From Oopsacas minuta (taxonomy: Eukaryota; Animalia; Porifera), in assembly GCA_024704765.1 (NCBI GenBank), contig JAKMXF010000356.1, forward strand, positions 94,076 to 158,075: a DNA stretch of 64,000 nt. Reading direction: 5' to 3'. This document shows, one piece after another, positions 7,801-17,469 of the stretch (its first letter is position 1; each line of letters starts with the position of its first letter). The notes beneath the pieces are model-generated. The model was not told the origin of the DNA, ran no database searches, and saw nothing but the letters and a program-made list of their open reading frames with translations. The position numbers were made by a program, and so were the translations under genes.

Positions 7801-9490
7801 TATGCTAGCAAACCAAATTAAATATAGCGCGTATTAGAGGCGGGAATTAAACTTACAAGGATTATAAGTAGCTAGGGGACTAACAGGTATAAACAAACAA
7901 ACAAATTAGTACACAAGTAAACAGATAAACAAACAAACAAGCAAACAAACAAATAAACAAACAAACCTCAACAGGATGAGAATTCATAAGAGCATCCAGT
8001 CTCAGAGCACTATCAAAATCCATATTAACAAATTGTGTCCACATGTCAAATTCTGGAAATAACTTGTCAAGACACCAGAATTCCATCCAAGAAGCAAATC
8101 CCTCATTAAGCCACAAATGTGTCCACCACTCCATCGTAACTAGATTACCAAACCATTGATGTGCCAGTTCATGTGCTACTACCAATGCTACATACTTCTT
8201 CTGGTTGATAGGGGAGTGCTTGGGGTCTAAGAGGAGACAGGTCTCTCTATACGTGACTAACCTGTATATTACATTATTAATATGTGGATTAAGGTAACAC
8301 TTAATGGCGATTATCATAGAGGCAATAAGTGGAACAGGACCTGATGATTAGTTCAAACTACCATCAGACCAATTGAGCCACTGGGATGGTGGGCAATCAG
8401 CTGTCCATTAACACCCTACAAAGCTTACCCCCAATTCTCCATCGCACCAGCAGCGAAATCAGGTATAGCAATAAGATCCATCTTCGGGAGAGGATATTTA
8501 ATAGAGAAATAATCCTTGTAGAAGGGAAGAGCTTTAGTAGCAACATCCAGGGCGAATAGACCCTGCTCCTTCTTGCCCTTTGGGGTGTAGACTCTGATTA
8601 ATATCCCATCGGTGTCTGTAGCCTCAACATAGTCAAACTCACCAACAACAAAAGCCAATAGGTATGTGGACATTATTGGGGTTCTAGCGAATGTAACTAC
8701 TCTGTTATCACCTTGTAATTCATCGCTTGTGATTGGCTAGAATAGGAGGTGAAAATTGTATTAATGGACCGTGGATAGGTCATTTCTGATCTATAATATC
8801 CCTGGTCCAATCCTCACCATATTAGATAGAGCTAGTTTATCACTAGGGACTACTAGAGTAACATCAAATGATGCTTTGAGTGCAGGTTCATCCCAGCAGG
8901 GGAATGCTCGTCTAGCGTCTACTGATTCGAATTGAGTGGCAGCAGCATATCTATCCTCACCTTCAGGTGTTGTGTACTTGGATCTGGAAAGTAAACAATA
9001 ATAAATATTTAAGAAACATAGTTTGTCTGTTTGTTTACCTGTAAAAGCCTTTCATTTGATCATTCAAGACACCTCTAAATGCCAAAGACAGCTTGCCGTC
9101 TCCAGTCAACGCATCATTGAATGTTAACTTAACAATCTCGCTGTCCTTATGGTACTCAACATTTCCCCCTTGTAAATTAGAACCAGGGATGTTAGCTTCA
9201 TACGTGCAGGAATCAATCTCTATCTCACAAGAATTAAGAGTTACTGAATTTACATCTTTTGACACCTTTGTGTCAATAACAACATTTCCCTTGAAGGTGA
9301 AATCTTTCAAATTTGGTTCCAGTTTCAAATTATAGTTCACAGGAAGAATATGTGTGGGGAGACGTTCAAAAGCAGGTTTTGCTGTTGCCATGGTTACCTG
9401 ACGGAATGGTCTATTGGAATGTAGTATGGATAGTGAAGGAAGAAATCTGATTGGTGGAGGGCTAGCTAATGTTAAGCGGCTAATTAGCAT
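4836..9490 (-). CDS. NPEPPS: Puromycin-sensitive aminopeptidase (M1 family), multi-exon
   Basis: AGAMENWG exopeptidase motif, [13 protein letters not shown]...NEGFA zinc motif, ISYSKGAS, and ERAP1-like C-terminal exons. Confidence 0.95.
5146..5235. mobile_element. Partial hAT-like MITE related to 7034-7134
   Basis: Starts CAGTGGTTCCAAAC and shares GACAGCAGGGGTC.ACAG..GTGTT with the 7034 element. No right TIR seen. Confidence 0.4.
7034..7134. mobile_element. hAT (Charlie-like) MITE with 8-bp target-site duplication
   Basis: TIRs CAGTGGTTCCAAAC and CAGCACTTCCCAAC. Flanks AACTGAAC and AACTAAAC match at 7 of 8 positions. Confidence 0.65.
7301..7708 (-). CDS. Divergent bHLH protein nested in the NPEPPS intron 6930-7966, same strand
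   Basis: [26 protein letters not shown][22 protein letters not shown] fits basic-helix1-loop-helix2. Single-exon 135-aa ORF. Confidence 0.7.
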   Translation of the reverse strand: MTRINPWKMSDTSMSVVGRPTHRRRSDMLPREYWTPQMWEEDRQLKRDREKSRKRNYKLAFGQLKEILSIDQKRLCHVDVLILAKDQIVTLAEQYFELTKQNKFTKDTNLPPIIDPEKLESAGKRIKLSANYPQN

Positions 9491-9947: not shown

Positions 9948-11108
9948 ATGGCGAATAAACTCGAGGAAAAGAGTGACAAGGTTCCGGTTATAGAGAAGAT
10001 AGGGGAGGAGATAGGGGAGGAGATAGGGGAGAAGATAGGGGAGGAGATAGGGGAGGAGATAGGGGAGGAGATAGAGGAGGAGATAGGGGAGGAGATAGGG
10101 GAGAAGATAGGGGACGAGATAGTGGAGGAGATAGTGGAGGAGATAGAGGAGAAGATAGGGGAGAAGATAGGGGAGAAGATAGTGGAGGAGATAGTGGAGG
10201 AGATAGGGGAGAAGATAGGGGAGGAGATAGGGGAGAAGATAGTGGAAAAGATAGAGGAGAAGATAGGGGAAGAGAGAGAGGAGGAATTAGAGAAACAGAT
10301 TATAGAAAATGCGTTCCAAAAAGGTGTTCAATTGGATAAAGAGTCGCAGAAATACTTAGCGGATAAGCTTAAAGAATACTACAGTACACCGCCACATCCC
10401 TTATACGGCTCCCAGCAAATTACAGCATTTGCTGTTGGAGCATTGGCTGCACAATTCGGATTAAATATCGACCAAGACCTGTTGGCTGACTTATTGACTG
10501 ATGTAGGGACCACTGTAATACAACTGGCTATTAGAAGGTTCTTACGACCTCAACAATACGCAGTGTTTCCAGCTACATTAGGGCCACGGATTAACCAAAA
10601 TCAAAACCAAAATCTGCTGAGTCCTGACCTCACCATGAAGCATATGGTCTCACAAAGCATTAGACCTCTGGAATACACCCTGTACATATGTGCTAGTAGG
10701 ATTACTACAGGCGTTAAATTACTATACCACTGTACGGTTGATGGGGAGGATTACATAACTAGTCCTTATTTCGTGGAAGATAAGAATGTGGGTGAAATAG
10801 TACCCTGTGCTGATCCAATAAACATAACTGAAGACCTGAAAAGACCTAATCCTATACCTGCAATCAGGAGGGCGCTTAGGAGTTTAGAATCAAGCAATTC
10901 AGGAATGGATGATGGGTTCTATTTTGATGACTTTTCTTGGAAGAGAGTCGGTTCTGTGGGAAACTTTTCGCTCCAGAGTCCCAGACGAAGTTCAAGCAGT
11001 TCTCAGTTCCTTTATTGGATGGATGAAGCGGGTGAAGCTAGAAACCCTGAGGTGTCCTTTACCGAGAATAGATCTAGAGAGCTTCAGTTAGAAATAACAG
11101 AATCATAA
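9948..11108 (+). CDS. Unrecognised intronless protein, family member 1, with N-terminal (E/K)EIG repeat
   Basis: 386-aa ORF, near-identical to 14333-15286 outside the N-terminus and homologous to 12456-13214. Confidence 0.8.
   Translation: MANKLEEKSDKVPVIEKIGEEIGEEIGEKIGEEIGEEIGEEIEEEIGEEIGEKIGDEIVEEIVEEIEEKIGEKIGEKIVEEIVEEIGEKIGEEIGEKIVEKIEEKIGEEREEELEKQIIENAFQKGVQLDKESQKYLADKLKEYYSTPPHPLYGSQQITAFAVGALAAQFGLNIDQDLLADLLTDVGTTVIQLAIRRFLRPQQYAVFPATLGPRINQNQNQNLLSPDLTMKHMVSQSIRPLEYTLYICASRITTGVKLLYHCTVDGEDYITSPYFVEDKNVGEIVPCADPINITEDLKRPNPIPAIRRALRSLESSNSGMDDGFYFDDFSWKRVGSVGNFSLQSPRRSSSSSQFLYWMDEAGEARNPEVSFTENRSRELQLEITES
9990..10272 (+). repeat. Coding 12-bp minisatellite (GAGGAGATAGGG consensus), about 23 units
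   Basis: Directly visible tandem units with variants AAG/GAG and GGG/GTG/GAG. Confidence 0.95.
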
Positions 11109-11284
11109 ACAATCAGTGTTTGTTTGTTTAAGAGGAATATTTGGTGATTTCTACTTGAGAGTGTAGAGGGGAGTAGGCTAGTGTTTGTTTGTTTGATAAG
11201 TAAATTTTGTAGCTTAAAATAGGTGTCAAAGGGTGTTAAGGGATCAGAGCACCAGAGGTCAAGAGGAACATTAACCGATACATG
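10281..11284 (+). repeat. Segmental duplication, copy 1 (partner 14468-15513), covering CDS and about 180-230 bp of 3' flank
   Basis: Near-identical sequence from GAGGAATTAGAGAAACAG through GAGGAACATTAACCGATACATGA. Confidence 0.95.
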
Positions 11285-11511
11285 ATATATACAGAATGCT
11301 GGTTCTAGGATCATATTTCATATTTGAATTATAGAGTTCAATATCAGCTGTAATAATACTTACAAATTGTATGTACACAAATATGTTAGACATTGAAAGT
11401 GTCAGAATCAAATTATACGTCCCTGTTAACACCTAATCAGCTGGTGGAAGCTATTCTGAAATTTGGCCACAAGTTGTGAAAATATGATTAATCATGTAAT
11501 GATCACATATG

Positions 11512-11881
11512 CACAGTGGCACGAAATGGTCAGAATGTGGAAATAGGTATTTTGATGGCACATAGGTCCTCAAAACGTATTATTGTCATATAGGTTTTCG
11601 ACCCCAACGAATCGAATGGTATACTATAAATAGCAGTTATTTGACGTGGAGAATCCATATTATTCAAAATTACATCATGACCACAAATTGGAACCATAAA
11701 TCAATCTTTCGAATTCAATTATGCTCTCATTGGAATAGACGTGAGAGCCAAATGAAAAGTCTCTTGTAGAGATGTTAAATGTTTTCCGAGGTTTGTGGGG
11801 GTGCTGAATTCAAATATCAACATTATAAAGCTATTTGAGGTTATAATTTTTTCACCTATTTCCACATGCCGTGCCACTGTG
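11512..11881. mobile_element. Transib-like non-autonomous element (370 bp) with CACAGTG termini and 5-bp TSD
   Basis: ATATG|CACAGTGGCACG...CGTGCCACTGTG|ATATG. A second TIR block, ATGTGGAAATAGGT, is present at both ends. Confidence 0.8.
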
Positions 11882-12455
11882 ATATGAAACCTAGAAAGGA
11901 AGTTTATTCATTAAAATTGGAAATAATCACTTCAGTAAGCATGCTATAGTAGCAAGCATACAAGTATAAATATTCACAATCATAACAATTATAATAAATA
12001 TACATAAAACACCTGTAATGATCCATATGATGTACTCCTGAGGATGGGAGCAGGGGACGAGGAGTTAGAATTTCATTATTTTGTGATGGGATAGCTGGAA
12101 AATTGGTTCATTAGATATACTAACTATAATCACAGCTATTCCTGATAGTTTCCATCAATGAATATATTTTTGTTATTGTTTGTGAGGATAAATGATTTAA
12201 ACTTTTGCTAGTAAGGTGTTTGCATTTTAGGCTCATATCCTCAAATTCCAATCCTTCACACAGATACAATAACTATTGCATATGAAGATGAGAATAACAA
12301 TTGACATTAGTATTTGTAGTAATAGTCAATAACTGCATGTTTGTAGTATATCTACTGATTTATTAAATTTGCATATATCTACCATTCCCTCTCACTGTTA
12401 ACAAACTCTAGCTACATATTCATACCTCAAATCAATCGTAGACAGAGTAGAGAAG

Positions 12456-13214
12456 ATGGCTTCCAAAGTTGACAAAGATCTACAAATACTAACACCTCAA
12501 GAAGGACTAGCTAACAAAGAGGAAGAAGTTAAATCTAAAGAAGAGACTACACAACCCCTTACTGAGGGGGTTAGACTCAAGGAATGCTCTCTGAATTCAG
12601 ACACGAATTATGTACGCGAGGCATTAACTAGATTTCTACCTAATCATACCGTAGATACCTTCGAGTTGCCAGAAGCAAATTCCTTAGGAGATCCAGTTGT
12701 TATGCAGGTGTTAAGAATAGGTACCGTAAGAATAACTCCAGATCCTTTCGGGGTATATCTAGCATACGGGACACCACAGACTAGATATACACTATACAGA
12801 GCAACCAATAATGCCAATCCTTTCGAGAAGAAATACCTGTACCAGTGGGAAACTCGTAGGAGGACGTTAGTAACATCTCCTTTCCACGAACCAATTCCTA
12901 CTCAGGGTTCTAGAGTTCCATGTGCTACAAGTGATATAACAGATGCCCTGATGGATAAGCACCCTATTGAGGCTATTGTGAAGGTGTTAGGGACAATAAA
13001 GTCCAATAGAATGGCAATCAATAACGGTTTGGATGGTCCAGATTTTTCCTGGAGGCAAAGTGGTCCTGACTTCAATTTCACGGTGTCTGTACCTGATTAT
13101 AAATCATTATGGGAAGATATAAATGAAAGCAGACTAGGTGCACAGCCTAAGCCAGGGATAAGACTAACAGGATATGAAAATAACAAGCTGAGGTTAAAAC
13201 TAGTAGATGTATGA
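12456..13214 (+). CDS. Unrecognised intronless protein, family member 2 (divergent paralog)
   Basis: Shares A..RFL, YTLY, TSP, VPCA..DIT..L, PI.AI...L and DFSW..G.NF motifs, in order, with members 1 and 3. Confidence 0.8.
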   Translation: MASKVDKDLQILTPQEGLANKEEEVKSKEETTQPLTEGVRLKECSLNSDTNYVREALTRFLPNHTVDTFELPEANSLGDPVVMQVLRIGTVRITPDPFGVYLAYGTPQTRYTLYRATNNANPFEKKYLYQWETRRRTLVTSPFHEPIPTQGSRVPCATSDITDALMDKHPIEAIVKVLGTIKSNRMAINNGLDGPDFSWRQSGPDFNFTVSVPDYKSLWEDINESRLGAQPKPGIRLTGYENNKLRLKLVDV

Positions 13215-14332
13215 TCTATTTTTAGTAACACTCTAACTGAGATATAATTATTGGATGTACTAACTCTACTGTAATTAATCATAATATAAATTGTCTTAGA
13301 TATTAGCTGCCGCCGTGTAATTATAAGTGAGGCCTCAATAAGGAGGGAATTGGGGATTCTACATACCTCATGCTAGGAGGATTTCTATGTAGAATATTCT
13401 AGAATAATCCATAAAGCTTGGGGTCAGCTGTCCTAAGATATTCTGTGATATTCAAGCATATACATGGTAATAGCAATTTCCTTATAAAGGAAACATATAA
13501 GCTTTGCTAATACAAGAATTCCACAGAATTCCATCTAGTTATCTGAGGAATTGTGGTTATACAGAATGTGCAACGGGACAAATATCATCCACTAAATGGT
13601 CAGCCATAATATTATAAGCAGCAATGTAACTTGGAATTTGAAAGTATTCCTCTAACAGCGTTATAGACCTTAGACATGGAAAGTTAAGATATTAAACTAA
13701 CTTGTGTGAAATAATATAAGTAATCAAGTGAGAGACAAGTAGACATTAGGGGTCTTAGAGTAATCGTAGAGGTGTTGTACCTCTCAAACACAAACGGATG
13801 AGGGGGGAATAAATACAATAGACTGAACTTAATAAGGTCACATAGGGAACAGTCCGGAATAAGTGTTGATCCAAGCCTTAGCTGTCTAAATATTACTGTG
13901 CAGATGACGTGTAACTAATCAGGAAGCCGTGACAAGTATCTAGGAAGCTATCCATGTCTACCCCTTACATTAGGATAAAACAGTCATGAATTCGAACAAA
14001 TAATATTTTCCTTTGAGAGTTAGAATCACGGTTGTCGATTGTACATCACCCCTGGCGGAGAAACAGGAAAAAACAAATTGATAAAGATCCCCTGTAAGAA
14101 GGTAGAGGCTAATACTAACATCAACGGTTAGATTATATTATTTTCAATAATTACATTTACCATTTTAGGTGGTCTGAAATATGGAAATATTTTCTTTACA
14201 GCTAACCTGTATTATGTAATAATTGAGTAATATTAGAGACACGTCAGCAAATATTTAGTATTCAGCAAAACATAGCTGCTCCCTTATGTATATAATACAA
14301 AACAGGATTAAAACAAATAACAACAAGTAAAT

Positions 14333-15286
14333 ATGGGTAACGGTAATAGTCACGTCAAGTCAAAGAAACAAGGAAATCTATCTGACAATATCGAAGGACA
14401 AAACCACCTTACAAGAGCAGAAATGGAGCATGTAGGCAGTGGACTTGAAAGAGTAGTTAAGATAGAGGAGGAATTAGAGAAACAGATTATAGAAAATGCG
14501 TTCCTAAAAGGTGTTCAATTGGATAAAGAGTCGCAGAAATACTTAGCGGATAAGCTTAAAGAATATTACAGTACACCGCTACATCCCTTATACGGCTCCC
14601 AGCAAATTACAGCATTTGCTGTTGGAGCATTGACTGCACAATTCGGATTAAATATCGACCAAGACCTGTTGGCTGACTTATTGACTGATGTAGGGACCAC
14701 TGTAATACAACTGGCTATTAGAATGTTCTTACAACCTCAACAATATGCAGTGTTTCCAATTACATTAGGGCAACTGATAAACCAAAACCAAAACCAAAAT
14801 CTGCTGAGTCCTGACCTCACCATGAAGCATATGGTCTCACAGAGCACTAGACCTCTGGAATACACCCTGTACATATGTGCTAGTAGGATTACTACAGGCG
14901 TTAAATTACTATACCACTGTAGGGTTGTTGGGGAGGATTACATAACTAGTCCTTATTTCGTGGAAGATAAGAATGTGGGTGAAATAGTACCCTGTGCTGA
15001 TCCAATAAACATAACTGAACACCTAAGAAGACCTAATCCTATACCTGCAATTAGGAGGGCGCTTAGGAGTTTAGAATCAAGCAATTCAGGAATGGATAAT
15101 GGGTTCTATTTTGATGACTTTTCTTGGAAGAGAGTCGGTTCTGTGGGAAACTTTTCGCTCCAGAGTCCCAGACGAAGTTCAAGCAGTTCTCAGTTCCTTT
15201 ATTGGATGGGTGAAGCTAGAAACCCTGAGGTGTCCTTTACCGAGAATAGATCTAGAGAGCTTCAGTTAGGAATAACAGAATCATAA
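14333..15286 (+). CDS. Unrecognised intronless protein, family member 3, with MGNGNS myristoylation-type N-terminus
   Basis: 317-aa ORF; recent duplicate of 9948-11108 with a different N-terminus. Confidence 0.8.
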   Translation: MGNGNSHVKSKKQGNLSDNIEGQNHLTRAEMEHVGSGLERVVKIEEELEKQIIENAFLKGVQLDKESQKYLADKLKEYYSTPLHPLYGSQQITAFAVGALTAQFGLNIDQDLLADLLTDVGTTVIQLAIRMFLQPQQYAVFPITLGQLINQNQNQNLLSPDLTMKHMVSQSTRPLEYTLYICASRITTGVKLLYHCRVVGEDYITSPYFVEDKNVGEIVPCADPINITEHLRRPNPIPAIRRALRSLESSNSGMDNGFYFDDFSWKRVGSVGNFSLQSPRRSSSSSQFLYWMGEARNPEVSFTENRSRELQLGITES

Positions 15287-15511
15287 ACAATCAGTGTTTG
15301 TTTGTTTGTTTGTTTGTTGCATTTTCATAGAGACTACTAGTTATATTTGTTTGCGTATTTTAGAGGAATATTTGGTGATTACTTAGAGTGTAGAGGAGAG
15401 TAGGCTAGTGTTTGTTTGTTGTATAAGTAAATCTTGGTAGCTTAAAATGGGAGTCAAAGGGTGTTAAGGGATCAGAGCACCAGAGGTCAAGAGGAACATT
15501 AACCGATACAT

Positions 15512-15679
15512 GAGTGGCAAATAGACGGCGAAGAAACAAGCTTCAGCATTCGAGTACCTGATGGTAACTTGTGGTGGCAGGATACAGATGATGAGAGGCT
15601 AGGGACAAGACCCAAACCTGAGGTCATACAGACATGTAATAGAAGCCAGAAGATGTTAATAAAATTGAATGTAACCTGA
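15512..15679 (+). pseudogene. 3' remnant of a fourth member of the same family
   Basis: Translates EWQIDGEETSFSIRVPDGNLWWQDTDDERLGTRPKPEVIQTCNRSQKMLIKLNVT*, aligning with the C-terminus of 12456-13214 (SWRQSGPDFNFTVSVPDYKSLWEDINESRLGAQPKPG..KLRLKLVDV*). Stop codon just upstream in this frame. Confidence 0.7.
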
Positions 15680-16086: not shown

Positions 16087-17469
16087 CTATAAATATAACT
16101 TCTGGTGTCTCACAATGAAGCTAGAAGCCTCGTCAGCTGAGGAGGTCTTAGTAGGATCACTTATTGAACCATCTGGTAAGCTCCCTGTAATAATATATGA
16201 TATAAAAGGTGTTAAAATAATCATATAACGGAGATAGAACCTGTGGGTAGAAGAGAACTAACCAATGAATACTCCAGGTTTCTCTATACTCTCAAATGCC
16301 ATAAAGTTAGGCGGGACTATATGGGCTCGGAATTGGCTACAAGTGTCCAAGGGTCCGCTTGCACCCATCAGTATTCCCTCCTGTATAGCTAGATGGACAG
16401 CTGGATTCTGTTTCATAGAAAACGAATATAATTGCTCTGTAGGTGATTGAGTGACGTAGACAAGGAACTCTGAAGAGGGTTCAGCTAGTCCCAATGTGTC
16501 GATAATATTATCAGCCCTTATATGGAGACATTTCTTACTGAGCTTGCTCTCTAGCAACACAACGTTACCTATGGAATGAAGGATTGTTAACACTGTTAAT
16601 TATCAGATTAGATAGTTAGGTACCATTCTGTAATGCTTCAAATTGGTTCCCGGAGGTGACAACCTCATTAACACCTTTTTGCAGAGAGCTACTGACCTCC
16701 TTCAGGGCTGTATCAGCTGTATTGGTCTGCATGGGTTTGAAATGTGCAGCTAAATGTTCCTATAGAATATATGGTTTGTTAGGTGTCAAGTGGTGTAACT
16801 GAAAAAAAAAAATATCTGAGCGAAATATTAATAGACCACTGATAGAAAGTGATAAATGTGTCGACCTATCAGATTCTAACTGTTACGCATTGATAATCAA
16901 TTGTACAAGTATTGATATATGATTAATCTTAACACCTATCTGTACCTTGAGTGTCTGTGCGGGGTTAGTAATTGCTCCTGTATTCAGTGTTCCTATATTG
17001 TGTCCTGGGTTAGAGATTGATTCTAGAATGATATATTTATCTGTTGTTATAGAGGCACTGAACTCACAATCTGGACCTCCTGTACCTCTACATGTCAACA
17101 AGCCCCCTGTAGAGTACAAAAAGTAAACAACACAAACAAACAAATAAACAAACACACAAACAAACCAGCAAGAGATATAAACTGAGTATTATAGCCACAA
17201 TTCCTAATAGTAAATCTATTAGGAGCAATACTATTAACAAAAAAGTTCGAGTAAGCATCAAGTATCCCTAGAGAGTCCAAATTCCCATCCGGTAGACACC
17301 TGAGGTATTTCCCAGATGTCTTAGAGAGCAGGGCTACCCGCCTTCCGCTCTGGAACACCTCTAGGGGATTAGAGGGGGTGGTCATCTGTGAGAACTGAGC
17401 CTCTCCTGTTTTCAGAGCCTGGTCTAGCTCCTTTCCGATACTACTCAAATTAGTGTTAGCTTGTCCCAT
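16087..17469 (-). CDS. Protein with two tandem FGF-like beta-trefoil domains, no signal peptide (5 exons)
   Basis: Repeat 1: VALLSKTSGKYLRCLPDG...DCEF...YIILES..PG..IG..G...AAHFKP. Repeat 2: VLLESKLSKKCLHIRAD...C..F...FMAFES..PG..IG..PDG. Exons at about 17469-17173, 17107-16942, 16770-16623, 16570-16262 and 16188-16087. Confidence 0.7.

What the first reader, a model, noticed from the sequence alone, without database searches (positions are those of the whole stretch)
9948..15679. Tandem array of an unrecognised intronless protein family with swapped N-termini
Seen: three same-strand single-exon ORFs plus a remnant share a ~200-aa core with ordered motifs (A..RFL, YTLY, TSP, VPCA..(N/D)IT..L, PI.AI...L, DFSW..G.NF..P). 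They differ completely at the N-terminus: acidic repeat, plain, or MGxxxS. I do not recognise the core as any named domain, and nearly all housekeeping neighbours are intron-rich. Inference: a lineage-specific, rapidly turning-over family, possibly immune or effector-like, or acquired by horizontal or retro transfer. The function is unknown.
Basis: partly seen in the sequence, partly recalled or inferred. Interest (0 to 1): 0.78.

Follow-up and report, generated by a model that had tools for sequence, protein, structure and literature searches.

The report
Lipid-anchored beta-trefoil gene cluster, glass sponge
Three neighbouring intron-less genes and a fragment in the glass sponge Oopsacas minuta belong to an unnamed family, so far named only from glass sponges, whose core is predicted with high confidence to be a beta-trefoil and whose usual start is a fatty-acid membrane-anchor signal; this is a modestly interesting new family, not a new kind of protein.

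Summary
Three intact same-strand ORFs (9948-11108, 12456-13214, 14333-15286) and a C-terminal remnant (15503-15679) share a ~210-aa core. ORF1 and ORF3 are a recent duplicate (91% DNA identity, 93% protein identity) whose homology stops inside the coding region, so their N-termini really differ.

The core matches no Pfam family and no PDB sequence. A profile search of 1.84 billion representatives found 63 relatives. The five hits outside this window that carry a source name are all from glass sponges (Oopsacas minuta, and transcripts of Vazella pourtalesii).

With a 57-sequence alignment AlphaFold2 gives pLDDT 92.8 and pTM 0.90. Structure searches return only beta-trefoils (Z up to 12.5, rmsd 2.6 Å over 132 residues), and no trefoil subfamily stands out. 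Ricin-B, IL-1, FGF and hisactophilin signatures are not met.

Half of the full-length representatives (21 of 42) start with a myristoylation pattern, and 19 of these start MGC. ORF3 starts MGNGNS followed by a basic patch. ORF2 (MAS...) and ORF1 (an acidic EEIG repeat) lack the pattern.

My best reading is a cytosolic beta-trefoil binding module that is ancestrally lipid-tethered to membranes, with the N-terminal swaps changing localisation. The ligand is unknown. Nothing supports horizontal transfer or a transposon origin.

The scan had already noted myristoylation-motif trefoil proteins on other DNA of this genome (s1-313091). Kinship with this family is untested.

The parts
9948..11108 (+). 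ORF1, 386 aa. It starts MANK, then an acidic EEIG-type repeat, then a helical stretch and the trefoil core (profile match about 10461-11102).
9993..10285 (+). In-frame tandem repeat: 12-bp unit GAGGAGATAGGG, 24.4 copies, 89% matches. It ends where homology to ORF3 begins. The unit resembles the ORF3 sequence at 14461-14475, so it probably arose there by slippage (inference).
10273..11285 (+). Duplicated segment, copy A. It is 91% identical to 14460-15513 and covers the last 276 codons of ORF1 plus about 180 bp of 3' flank.
12456..13214 (+). ORF2, 252 aa, starting MASKV with no lipidation motif. It is an older paralogue whose nearest kin are the two copies on contig C277 (44-45% identity). Residues 45-252 (12588-13211) were modelled as an N-terminal helix plus a beta-trefoil with a helical insert.
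14333..15286 (+). ORF3, 317 aa. It starts MGNGNSHVKSKKQ, which fits the N-myristoylation pattern and is followed by a basic patch. It has no Cys3. The trefoil core lies at about 14648-15280.
14460..15513 (+). Duplicated segment, copy B, the partner of 10273-11285.
15503..15679 (+). Remnant: 58 codons matching only the C-terminal 50 profile positions (W.D...PKP.V...L.L), of the ORF2 type. It begins where duplicated segment B ends. I read it as a dead copy.

Best explanation
The locus is a birth-and-death tandem cluster of a small family of single-coding-exon genes. Named members outside this window come only from glass sponges, and Oopsacas minuta has about nine loci.

Each gene encodes a leaderless, hence cytosolic, protein built in three parts:
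- a variable, probably disordered N-terminal stretch;
- one amphipathic helix;
- a beta-trefoil domain that carries a family-specific helical insert.

The usual N-terminus in the family is MGC..(S/T)K. This is the classic signal for N-myristoylation of Gly2 plus palmitoylation of Cys3, and it would hold the trefoil on the cytoplasmic face of a membrane. The trefoil is a non-enzymatic binding scaffold, so the protein most likely works as a membrane-tethered adaptor for a still unknown protein, lipid-headgroup or cytoskeletal ligand.

In this window:
- ORF3 keeps a myristoylation pattern plus a basic patch, so I predict it is membrane-associated.
- ORF1 is its recent duplicate. Its 5' end was replaced and filled by an expanded 12-bp repeat that encodes an acidic tail, so I predict it is soluble.
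- ORF2 is an older paralogue with the family's second recurrent start (MA[S/T]), so I also predict it is soluble.

The 'swapped N-termini' are therefore best read as switches of localisation on a constant binding domain.

Shown here: the paralogy, the duplication boundaries, the predicted fold, the lipidation motifs and the taxonomic range of named members. Inferred: actual lipidation, localisation, binding function and expression of the three genes.
For: **Paralogy and cluster anatomy:**

**Family size in the genome:** C356 (this window), two loci on C277, two on C313, one on C222 and one on C26.

**Relatives:**
- 63 proteins at E<=1e-3 and 46 at E<=1e-10 among 1.84 billion representatives.
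- The five named ones outside this window are two O. minuta hypothetical proteins and three Vazella pourtalesii Trinity transcripts, so relatives are transcribed in another glass sponge.

**Fold:**
- AlphaFold2 pLDDT rose from 46 with 9 sequences to 92.8, pTM 0.90, with 57 sequences.
- The Foldseek top 50 are dominated by beta-trefoils, at probability about 1.0 and E from 1.8e-3.
- VIA-align against 48,161 representative chains gives 119 chains at Z>=8. The top 50 are all trefoils, and the best is Z 12.5, rmsd 2.6 Å, 132 of 145 residues. A second look gave the same picture.

**Lipidation motif:**
- 21 of 42 representatives of at least 215 aa match PROSITE PS00008 at residue 2. Of these, 19 start MGC and most have S/T at position 6 and K at position 7.
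- Two more carry the motif just after an upstream Met.
- Only two possible TM-like stretches were found, and one of them lies in a dubious 5' extension.

**Age of the family:** the tree shows Oopsacas genes pairing with other species' genes in several well-supported clades.
Against: - No experiment or RNA-seq was available for these three genes, so the start codons and expression are inferred.
- Lipidation is predicted from the motif only. Just one of the three window genes (ORF3) has it, and ORF3 lacks Cys3.
- The fold is a prediction.
- The trefoil gives no clue to the ligand, because lectins, FGFs, IL-1s and protease inhibitors all tie within about 2 Z units.
- dN/dS between ORF1 and ORF3 is 0.63 from only 23 differences. 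This does not exclude relaxed constraint, so ORF1 could be decaying.
'Glass-sponge restricted' therefore rests on five named sequences.
Confidence: 0.6

Rival explanations
1. Cytoplasmic lectin-like or toxin-like defence proteins of the ricin-B, MytiLec or fungal-lectin type. Under this reading the trefoil binds sugars, and the tandem, turning-over array reflects an arms race.
For: The highest structural scores go to lectins: Mitsuba/MytiLec Z 12.5, CNL 12.4, MPL 12.0 and HA33 11.6. The locus also shows tandem duplication, a remnant and a pseudogene.
Against: - No Ricin_B Pfam match was found in any of 57 members.
- 56 of 57 members have no QxW at all.
- The lectin scores are tied, within about 1-2 Z units, with Symfoil/FGF, cocaprin and IL-1.
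- There is no signal peptide, and the dominant N-terminus places the protein on the cytosolic membrane face, away from most glycans.
Confidence: 0.15
2. Leaderless IL-1-like pro-cytokines. Under this reading a lipid-tethered N-terminal pro-region is cleaved to release a C-terminal trefoil that signals between cells.
For: - The best Foldseek rows include IL-1Ra, IL-1alpha, IL-18 and IL-37, at E 2e-3 to 1e-2.
- The proteins are leaderless with a variable N-terminal region ahead of the trefoil.
Against: - PF00340 and PF15095 match neither the family nor anything else in the genome. The 14 control genomes were silent too, so the whole-genome blank is weak.
- The (F/L)ES motif is not conserved. It occurs in 7 of 57 sequences, at scattered columns.
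- There is no PDZ domain.
- The trefoil is encoded by one exon, whereas IL-1anc genes use 3-5 exons with conserved phases. That survey found no IL-1anc in poriferans (PMC13736523).
- IL-1s score Z about 10.2, below the lectins.
Confidence: 0.08
3. Hisactophilin-like membrane-actin linker with a myristoyl switch.
For: Hisactophilin is the known precedent for an N-myristoylated beta-trefoil (PMC9245636). This family shares the predicted fold and the Gly2 motif.
Against: - The proteins are not histidine-rich: 3 His of 252 residues in ORF2 and 7 of 317 in ORF3.
- A linker of 45-120 residues separates Gly2 from the trefoil, whereas in hisactophilin the lipid packs into the domain that directly follows.
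- Dual acylation (MGC) suggests a stable anchor rather than a switch.
- No sequence similarity to hisactophilin was detected.
Confidence: 0.1
4. Horizontally acquired, retro-copied or transposon-borne ORFs, or non-functional ORFs with no role in the host.
For: The ORFs are single-exon and tandemly duplicated. dN/dS of the young pair is 0.63. A remnant and a frameshifted copy exist.
Against: - GC content is 0.37-0.40, like the surrounding window.
- Only about nine loci exist in 61 Mb, and only 63 representatives exist worldwide.
- No named bacterial or viral relative was found.
- Well-supported clades join Oopsacas genes with other species' genes, and the conserved core yields a confident fold.
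- Relatives are transcribed in Vazella.
- Single-exon tandem families are ordinary in glass-sponge genomes (PMC10282587).
Confidence: 0.05

Closest known systems
Hisactophilin (Dictyostelium), an N-myristoylated beta-trefoil that binds membrane and actin
   Same: It combines a predicted beta-trefoil with an N-terminal Gly2 myristoylation signal. It is leaderless and cytosolic.
   Different: This family is not His-rich. A long linker and a helix lie between the anchor and the trefoil. Cys3 adds palmitoylation in most members, and a helical insert sits in the trefoil. No sequence similarity was detected, so it is a functional analogue at most, not a family member.
Ricin-B-like / MytiLec-type beta-trefoil lectins (CNL, MPL, Mitsuba, HA33)
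   Same: These give the best structural superpositions (Z 11.6-12.5, rmsd 2.4-2.8 Å over about 130 residues). The fungal ones are also leaderless cytoplasmic proteins.
   Different: There is no Pfam match and no QxW motif. Sequence identity is 5-10%. The scores are tied with those of non-lectin trefoils.
IL-1 superfamily / IL-1anc
   Same: Leaderless beta-trefoil at the C-terminus, preceded by a variable N-terminal region. IL-1 family members are among the Foldseek top hits.
   Different: There is no PF00340 or PF15095 match, no conserved (F/L)ES, no PDZ domain and a single-exon trefoil. IL-1anc was reported absent from sponges (PMC13736523).
Intracellular FGF homologous factors (FGF11-14) and other FGF-type trefoils
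   Same: Leaderless intracellular trefoils that act as binding adaptors. Z is about 10-11.
   Different: No FGF Pfam match was found. The family has its own conserved motifs (TSPY, VPC, F.W, NF, YW) and a helical insert.
SH4-type dual-acylation signals (MGC... of Src-family kinases and G-alpha subunits)
   Same: The N-terminal MGC..(S/T)K pattern is present in 19 of 42 full-length representatives.
   Different: Here the signal is attached to a beta-trefoil. Within this window only ORF3 keeps the Gly2 pattern, and it lacks Cys3.

Membership tests
Beta-trefoil fold (structural class) | About 12 strands forming a six-stranded barrel capped by three hairpins, superposable on solved trefoils over most of the domain | tested here: met
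   The model has pLDDT 92.8 and pTM 0.90 with 13 strands. All top 50 of 48,161 chains are trefoils; the best is Z 12.5, rmsd 2.6 Å, 132/145 residues, and 119 chains reach Z>=8. This rests on a predicted model, not a solved structure.
Ricin-B-type lectin | Match to the Ricin_B_lectin Pfam models | tested here: not met
   No such hit was found for the three ORFs or for the 57 members, even at E<=10.
Ricin-B-type lectin | QxW motif repeated in the three subdomains | tested here: not met
   56 of 57 members contain no QxW at all.
Ricin-B-type lectin | Carbohydrate binding | not testable with these tools
   This needs glycan arrays or haemagglutination assays.
IL-1 superfamily / IL-1anc | Match to Pfam IL1 (PF00340) or IL33_bt (PF15095) | tested here: not met
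   No hit in family members. Neither model matched anywhere in the genome, but the control genomes were silent too.
IL-1 superfamily / IL-1anc | Conserved (F/L)ES motif in strand 9 (PMC13736523) | tested here: not met
   [FL]ES occurs in 7 of 57 sequences, at scattered alignment columns. The conserved motif in that region is F-x-W.
IL-1 superfamily / IL-1anc | [quoted passage not shown] | tested here: not met
   No PDZ hit was found. The whole profile is covered by one open frame in each gene.
Hisactophilin | N-terminal Gly2 myristoylation signal | tested here: met
   The PS00008 pattern is at the N-terminus of ORF3 and of 21 of 42 full-length representatives. ORF1 and ORF2 lack it. Only the motif was tested; actual lipidation was not.
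Hisactophilin | Histidine-rich surface, and a trefoil of about 118 aa directly following Gly2 | tested here: not met
   ORF2 has 3 His in 252 aa and ORF3 has 7 in 317 aa. The trefoil begins 60-170 residues after the start.
FGF / FHF | Match to the Pfam FGF model | tested here: not met
   No FGF hit was found in any member.
Dual-acylated (myristoyl + palmitoyl) membrane-anchored proteins | Met-Gly-Cys start with a small residue at position 6 and no Pro at position 7 | tested here: inconclusive
   The feature is met by 19 of 42 full-length relatives. Within the window only ORF3 has Gly2, with Asn instead of Cys at position 3 and a KSKK patch. Enzymatic lipidation cannot be tested here.

The most novel reading that the evidence does not exclude
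Glass sponges, whose tissue is largely one giant syncytium, may have evolved their own set of lipid-tethered beta-trefoil adaptors. This family would be one part. The unrelated myristoylation-motif FGF-like gene next door (16087-17469) and the IL-1-like triplet noted elsewhere in the genome would be others. Such adaptors might organise the membrane-cytoskeleton interface, or act as tethered, releasable signalling domains. Soluble and anchored paralogues, produced by N-terminal exchange, could then act as competitors or regulators of one another.
Probability: 0.12. Interest if true: 0.7.

Novelty: new variant of a known kind. Interest (0 to 1): 0.42.

Why it matters
This gives a structural identity and a testable cell-biological prediction to a family that public annotation lists only as 'hypothetical protein'. 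The predictions are membrane tethering through Gly2 and Cys3, and a change of localisation when the N-terminus is swapped.

Lipid-anchored beta-trefoils are rare, and hisactophilin is the textbook case. A whole family of them confined to glass sponges would be a useful entry point into how syncytial sponge tissue organises its membranes.

The locus also shows compactly how new protein N-termini arise: a duplication breakpoint inside a coding region, followed by expansion of a 12-bp repeat.

The finding is not a new fold, a new mechanism or evidence of gene transfer.

Tried and rejected
**Searches that found nothing useful**
- Pfam on the three ORFs and on all 57 aligned members gave only chance-level hits.
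- PDB sequence searches with ORF2 and with two profiles found nothing below E 0.25.
- The word-index protein search returned only window proteins with the first profile and only 8 hits with the second.
- The ESM Atlas gave scores of at most 0.86 for ORF2, with an unusable stored model (pLDDT 0.33), and nothing for ORF3.

**First structure attempt**
- AlphaFold2 with only 9 paralogues was poor (pLDDT 46), and its Foldseek hits were meaningless. It was superseded by the 57-sequence model.

**Known glass-sponge silica proteins**
- Hexaxilin, perisilin and glassin are rejected. By their published description, perisilin and glassin have signal peptides, hexaxilin and perisilin are Cys-rich, and perisilin and glassin can carry His-rich regions (PMC10772126). 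This family is not like that.

**Neighbouring gene (16087-17469)**
- I searched it exon by exon against Pfam and ran hhalign on its 16261-16593 exon. No relation to the family was found.

**Attempts to identify the unnamed ENA relatives**
- A single-protein scan of JGI metagenomes with P0008 found no relative.

**Other**
- PF00340 and PF15095 searches of the whole genome were blank, but so were the controls.
- The earlier-noted IL-1-like triplet could not be located. Contig C277 holds only two family copies, interleaved with LRR-EGF receptor-like genes.

Full report
**1. What is in the sequence**

The window lies in the 61.46-Mb, 365-contig assembly of the glass sponge Oopsacas minuta. A paralogue on another contig is NCBI KAI6653403.1, 'hypothetical protein LOD99_3622 [Oopsacas minuta]'.

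Between 9948 and 15679 the + strand carries three uninterrupted ORFs:

| ORF | Coordinates | Length |
|---|---|---|
| ORF1 | 9948-11108 | 386 aa |
| ORF2 | 12456-13214 | 252 aa |
| ORF3 | 14333-15286 | 317 aa |

- ORF1 and ORF3 are 93% identical over 276 residues.
- ORF2 is 33% identical to ORF3 over the 99-residue central stretch (E 9e-12).
- A family HMM run over all six frames of the 64-kb window finds these three and one further piece, 15503-15676. That piece matches only the last 50 profile positions (E 2.2e-6). Nothing else in the window scores.

**2. Anatomy of the cluster**

- DNA self-comparison shows one duplicated block, 10273-11285 = 14460-15513, at 91% identity. It starts inside the coding region (codon 109 of ORF1, codon 43 of ORF3) and runs about 180-230 bp past the stop codons.
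- Upstream of the breakpoint the two genes share nothing.
- In ORF1 the breakpoint coincides with the end of a 12-bp tandem repeat (9993-10285, 24.4 copies, unit GAGGAGATAGGG). The repeat is read in frame as EEIG/EKIG/EEIV units.
- The unit resembles the ORF3 sequence at the start of homology, aagatagaggaggaa at 14461-14475. The repeat probably grew there by slippage; this is inference.
- Nei-Gojobori dN/dS for the pair is 0.63, from 16 non-synonymous and 7 synonymous differences (dS 0.04). The duplication is young and the data are too few to tell purifying selection from relaxed selection.
- The remnant begins exactly where duplicated block B ends. It is of the ORF2 type (35% identity to the ORF2 C-terminus; translation), so it is an older dead copy.

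**3. The family in the genome and elsewhere**

Profile searches of the whole assembly find about nine loci:
- the four in this window;
- two on C277, one intact starting MGYGNS and one frameshifted starting MGCKES;
- two adjacent ones on C313;
- one on C222, with MGAILS after an upstream Met;
- one on C26, starting MGCSSS.

No Pfam model matches any member, and no PDB sequence does. The word-index search saw almost only the window's own proteins.

Because the novelty claim rested on the absence of relatives, I ran the exhaustive profile search. It gave 63 representatives at E<=1e-3 and 46 at E<=1e-10, out of 1.84 billion.

Three look-ups of 30 of these gave names for five proteins. Two are O. 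minuta hypothetical proteins. Three are Trinity transcripts of Vazella pourtalesii, another hexactinellid. Relatives are therefore transcribed in a second glass sponge.

All other hits are unnamed ENA proteins on contigs of up to 2.5 Mb, often several per contig.

A maximum-likelihood tree places Oopsacas genes with other species' genes in several well-supported clades, for example C313a with the Vazella transcript P0071, and C222 with P0006/P0007. ORF2 groups with the two C277 copies, and ORF1/ORF3 sit on a long branch of their own. The family is therefore old within its range, with local birth and death, rather than uniformly fast-turning.

**4. The fold**

- With only the nine paralogues AlphaFold2 failed (pLDDT 46).
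- With the 57-sequence alignment A3 the ORF2 core, residues 45-252, is predicted at pLDDT 92.8 and pTM 0.90.
- The model has an N-terminal helix and 13 strands, with two short helices inserted after the eighth strand.
- Foldseek against the PDB returns mainly beta-trefoils: IL-1 family, Symfoil/FGF designs, ricin-B-like lectins, HA17/HA33, Kunitz-type proteins and others. Probability is about 1.0 but E-values are modest, 1.8e-3 and above.
- An independent all-against-representatives structural alignment gives 119 chains at Z>=8. The top 50 are all trefoils, and the best is Z 12.5, rmsd 2.6 Å over 132 of 145 residues. A second look at Foldseek's top 1000 agrees.
- No trefoil subfamily stands out. 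Lectins lead by 1-2 Z units over FGF, cocaprin, IL-1 and MIR domains, and identities are 3-13%.

The 'unrecognised core' is a sequence-orphan member of a very well known fold.

**5. The N-termini**

Among 42 representatives of at least 215 aa:
- 21 match the PROSITE N-myristoylation pattern at residue 2.
- 19 of those begin MGC, typically MGC..(S/T)K, the classic myristoyl-plus-palmitoyl signal. Some carry extra cysteines, such as MGCCCCCCK and MGCKCSKDCKCC.
- Nine begin MA[S/T].
- Two more have the MG motif directly after a probably spurious upstream Met.

I saw no signal peptide.

In this window:
- ORF3 has MGNGNSH followed by KSKK, that is, a myristoylation pattern plus a basic patch but no Cys3.
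- ORF2 belongs to the MA[S/T] class.
- ORF1 has MANK plus the acidic repeat.

Because the anchor motif recurs across both halves of the tree, it is probably ancestral; this is inference.

**6. Most likely mechanism**

The proteins are cytosolic beta-trefoil binding modules. Most are held on the cytoplasmic leaflet of a membrane by N-terminal lipidation, through a flexible linker of 45-120 residues.

Exchanging the N-terminus by duplication breakpoint and repeat expansion (ORF1), or using the MA class of start (ORF2), would yield soluble versions of the same binding domain.

Shown here: the fold prediction, the motifs and the duplication structure. Inferred: lipidation, localisation, the binding role and expression of the three genes. 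The ligand is unknown.

**7. Comparison with known families**

- **Hisactophilin.** This is the known N-myristoylated beta-trefoil (PMC9245636). The present family shares the design but is not His-rich, has a long linker, and shows no sequence similarity.
- **Ricin-B lectins.** No Pfam match was found, and 56 of 57 members lack any QxW.
- **IL-1/IL-1anc.** No Pfam match in the family or the genome (the controls were also silent). There is no conserved (F/L)ES, no PDZ domain, and the trefoil is single-exon. The recent survey found no IL-1anc in sponges (PMC13736523).
- **FGF/FHF.** No Pfam match.
- **Silica proteins of glass sponges.** These differ in kind (PMC10772126).

**8. Horizontal transfer, transposon or dead DNA**

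- GC content of the region (0.37-0.40) is typical of the window.
- Copy number is low.
- Relatives with names are sponge proteins.
- Single-exon tandem families are reported as common in glass-sponge genomes (PMC10282587).

I find no support for transfer or a mobile-element origin. ORF1 alone might be decaying.

**9. Relation to earlier notes of this scan**

The scan had noted, on other DNA of this genome, a triplet of myristoylation-motif proteins with an IL-1-like trefoil (s1-313091, s1-313135). It had also noted, next to this cluster, a myristoylation-motif protein with FGF-like domains (s1-226814).

I could not locate the triplet. My profile does not detect it as a family member, and the neighbour's exons show no relation. 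I searched those exons one by one and did not join them. Whether these are separate inventions of the same design or very distant kin is open.

**10. Verdict**

This is a new, narrowly distributed sequence family of a known fold with an unusual but not unprecedented lipid-anchor design. Interest is moderate.

Noticed in passing
window 16087-17469 (- strand): The gene next to the cluster starts MGQANT, another myristoylation-type start, and has FGF-like trefoil sequence in several exons. Pfam gives nothing significant for any exon, and hhalign of the 16261-16593 exon shows no relation to the family. Two unrelated 'MG + trefoil' genes therefore sit side by side.
   Followed up: partly
L010:1097-1905 (G000:C277:286247-287055): This family copy is frameshifted. 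The public model KAI6653403.1 (250 aa) bridges the shift with a modelled intron. That intron removes the conserved FLYxW strand and the two residues preceding the invariant Pro of the TSP motif, so the locus is more likely a pseudogene than a spliced gene.
   Followed up: yes
L028:1009-9683 (G000:C277:277008-285682): On contig C277 the two family copies are interleaved with three single-exon genes for LRR + EGF + transmembrane receptor-like proteins, which are themselves tandem paralogues. The association may be chance.
   Followed up: no
window 9993-10285: The GA-rich 12-bp coding repeat gives the 10-12 kb bin a GC skew of +0.27, by far the highest in the window. The repeat length could be polymorphic or mis-assembled.
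   Followed up: no
window 11512-11881: An earlier first-reader note places a Transib-like element between ORF1 and ORF2. It lies just beyond the end of duplicated block A (11285). I did not examine it.
   Followed up: no
window 9035-9490 (- strand): This is the first coding exon of an M1-type aminopeptidase-like gene (judged from the translation). It diverges from ORF1 across a 460-bp AT-rich spacer, which may act as a shared promoter region.
   Followed up: no
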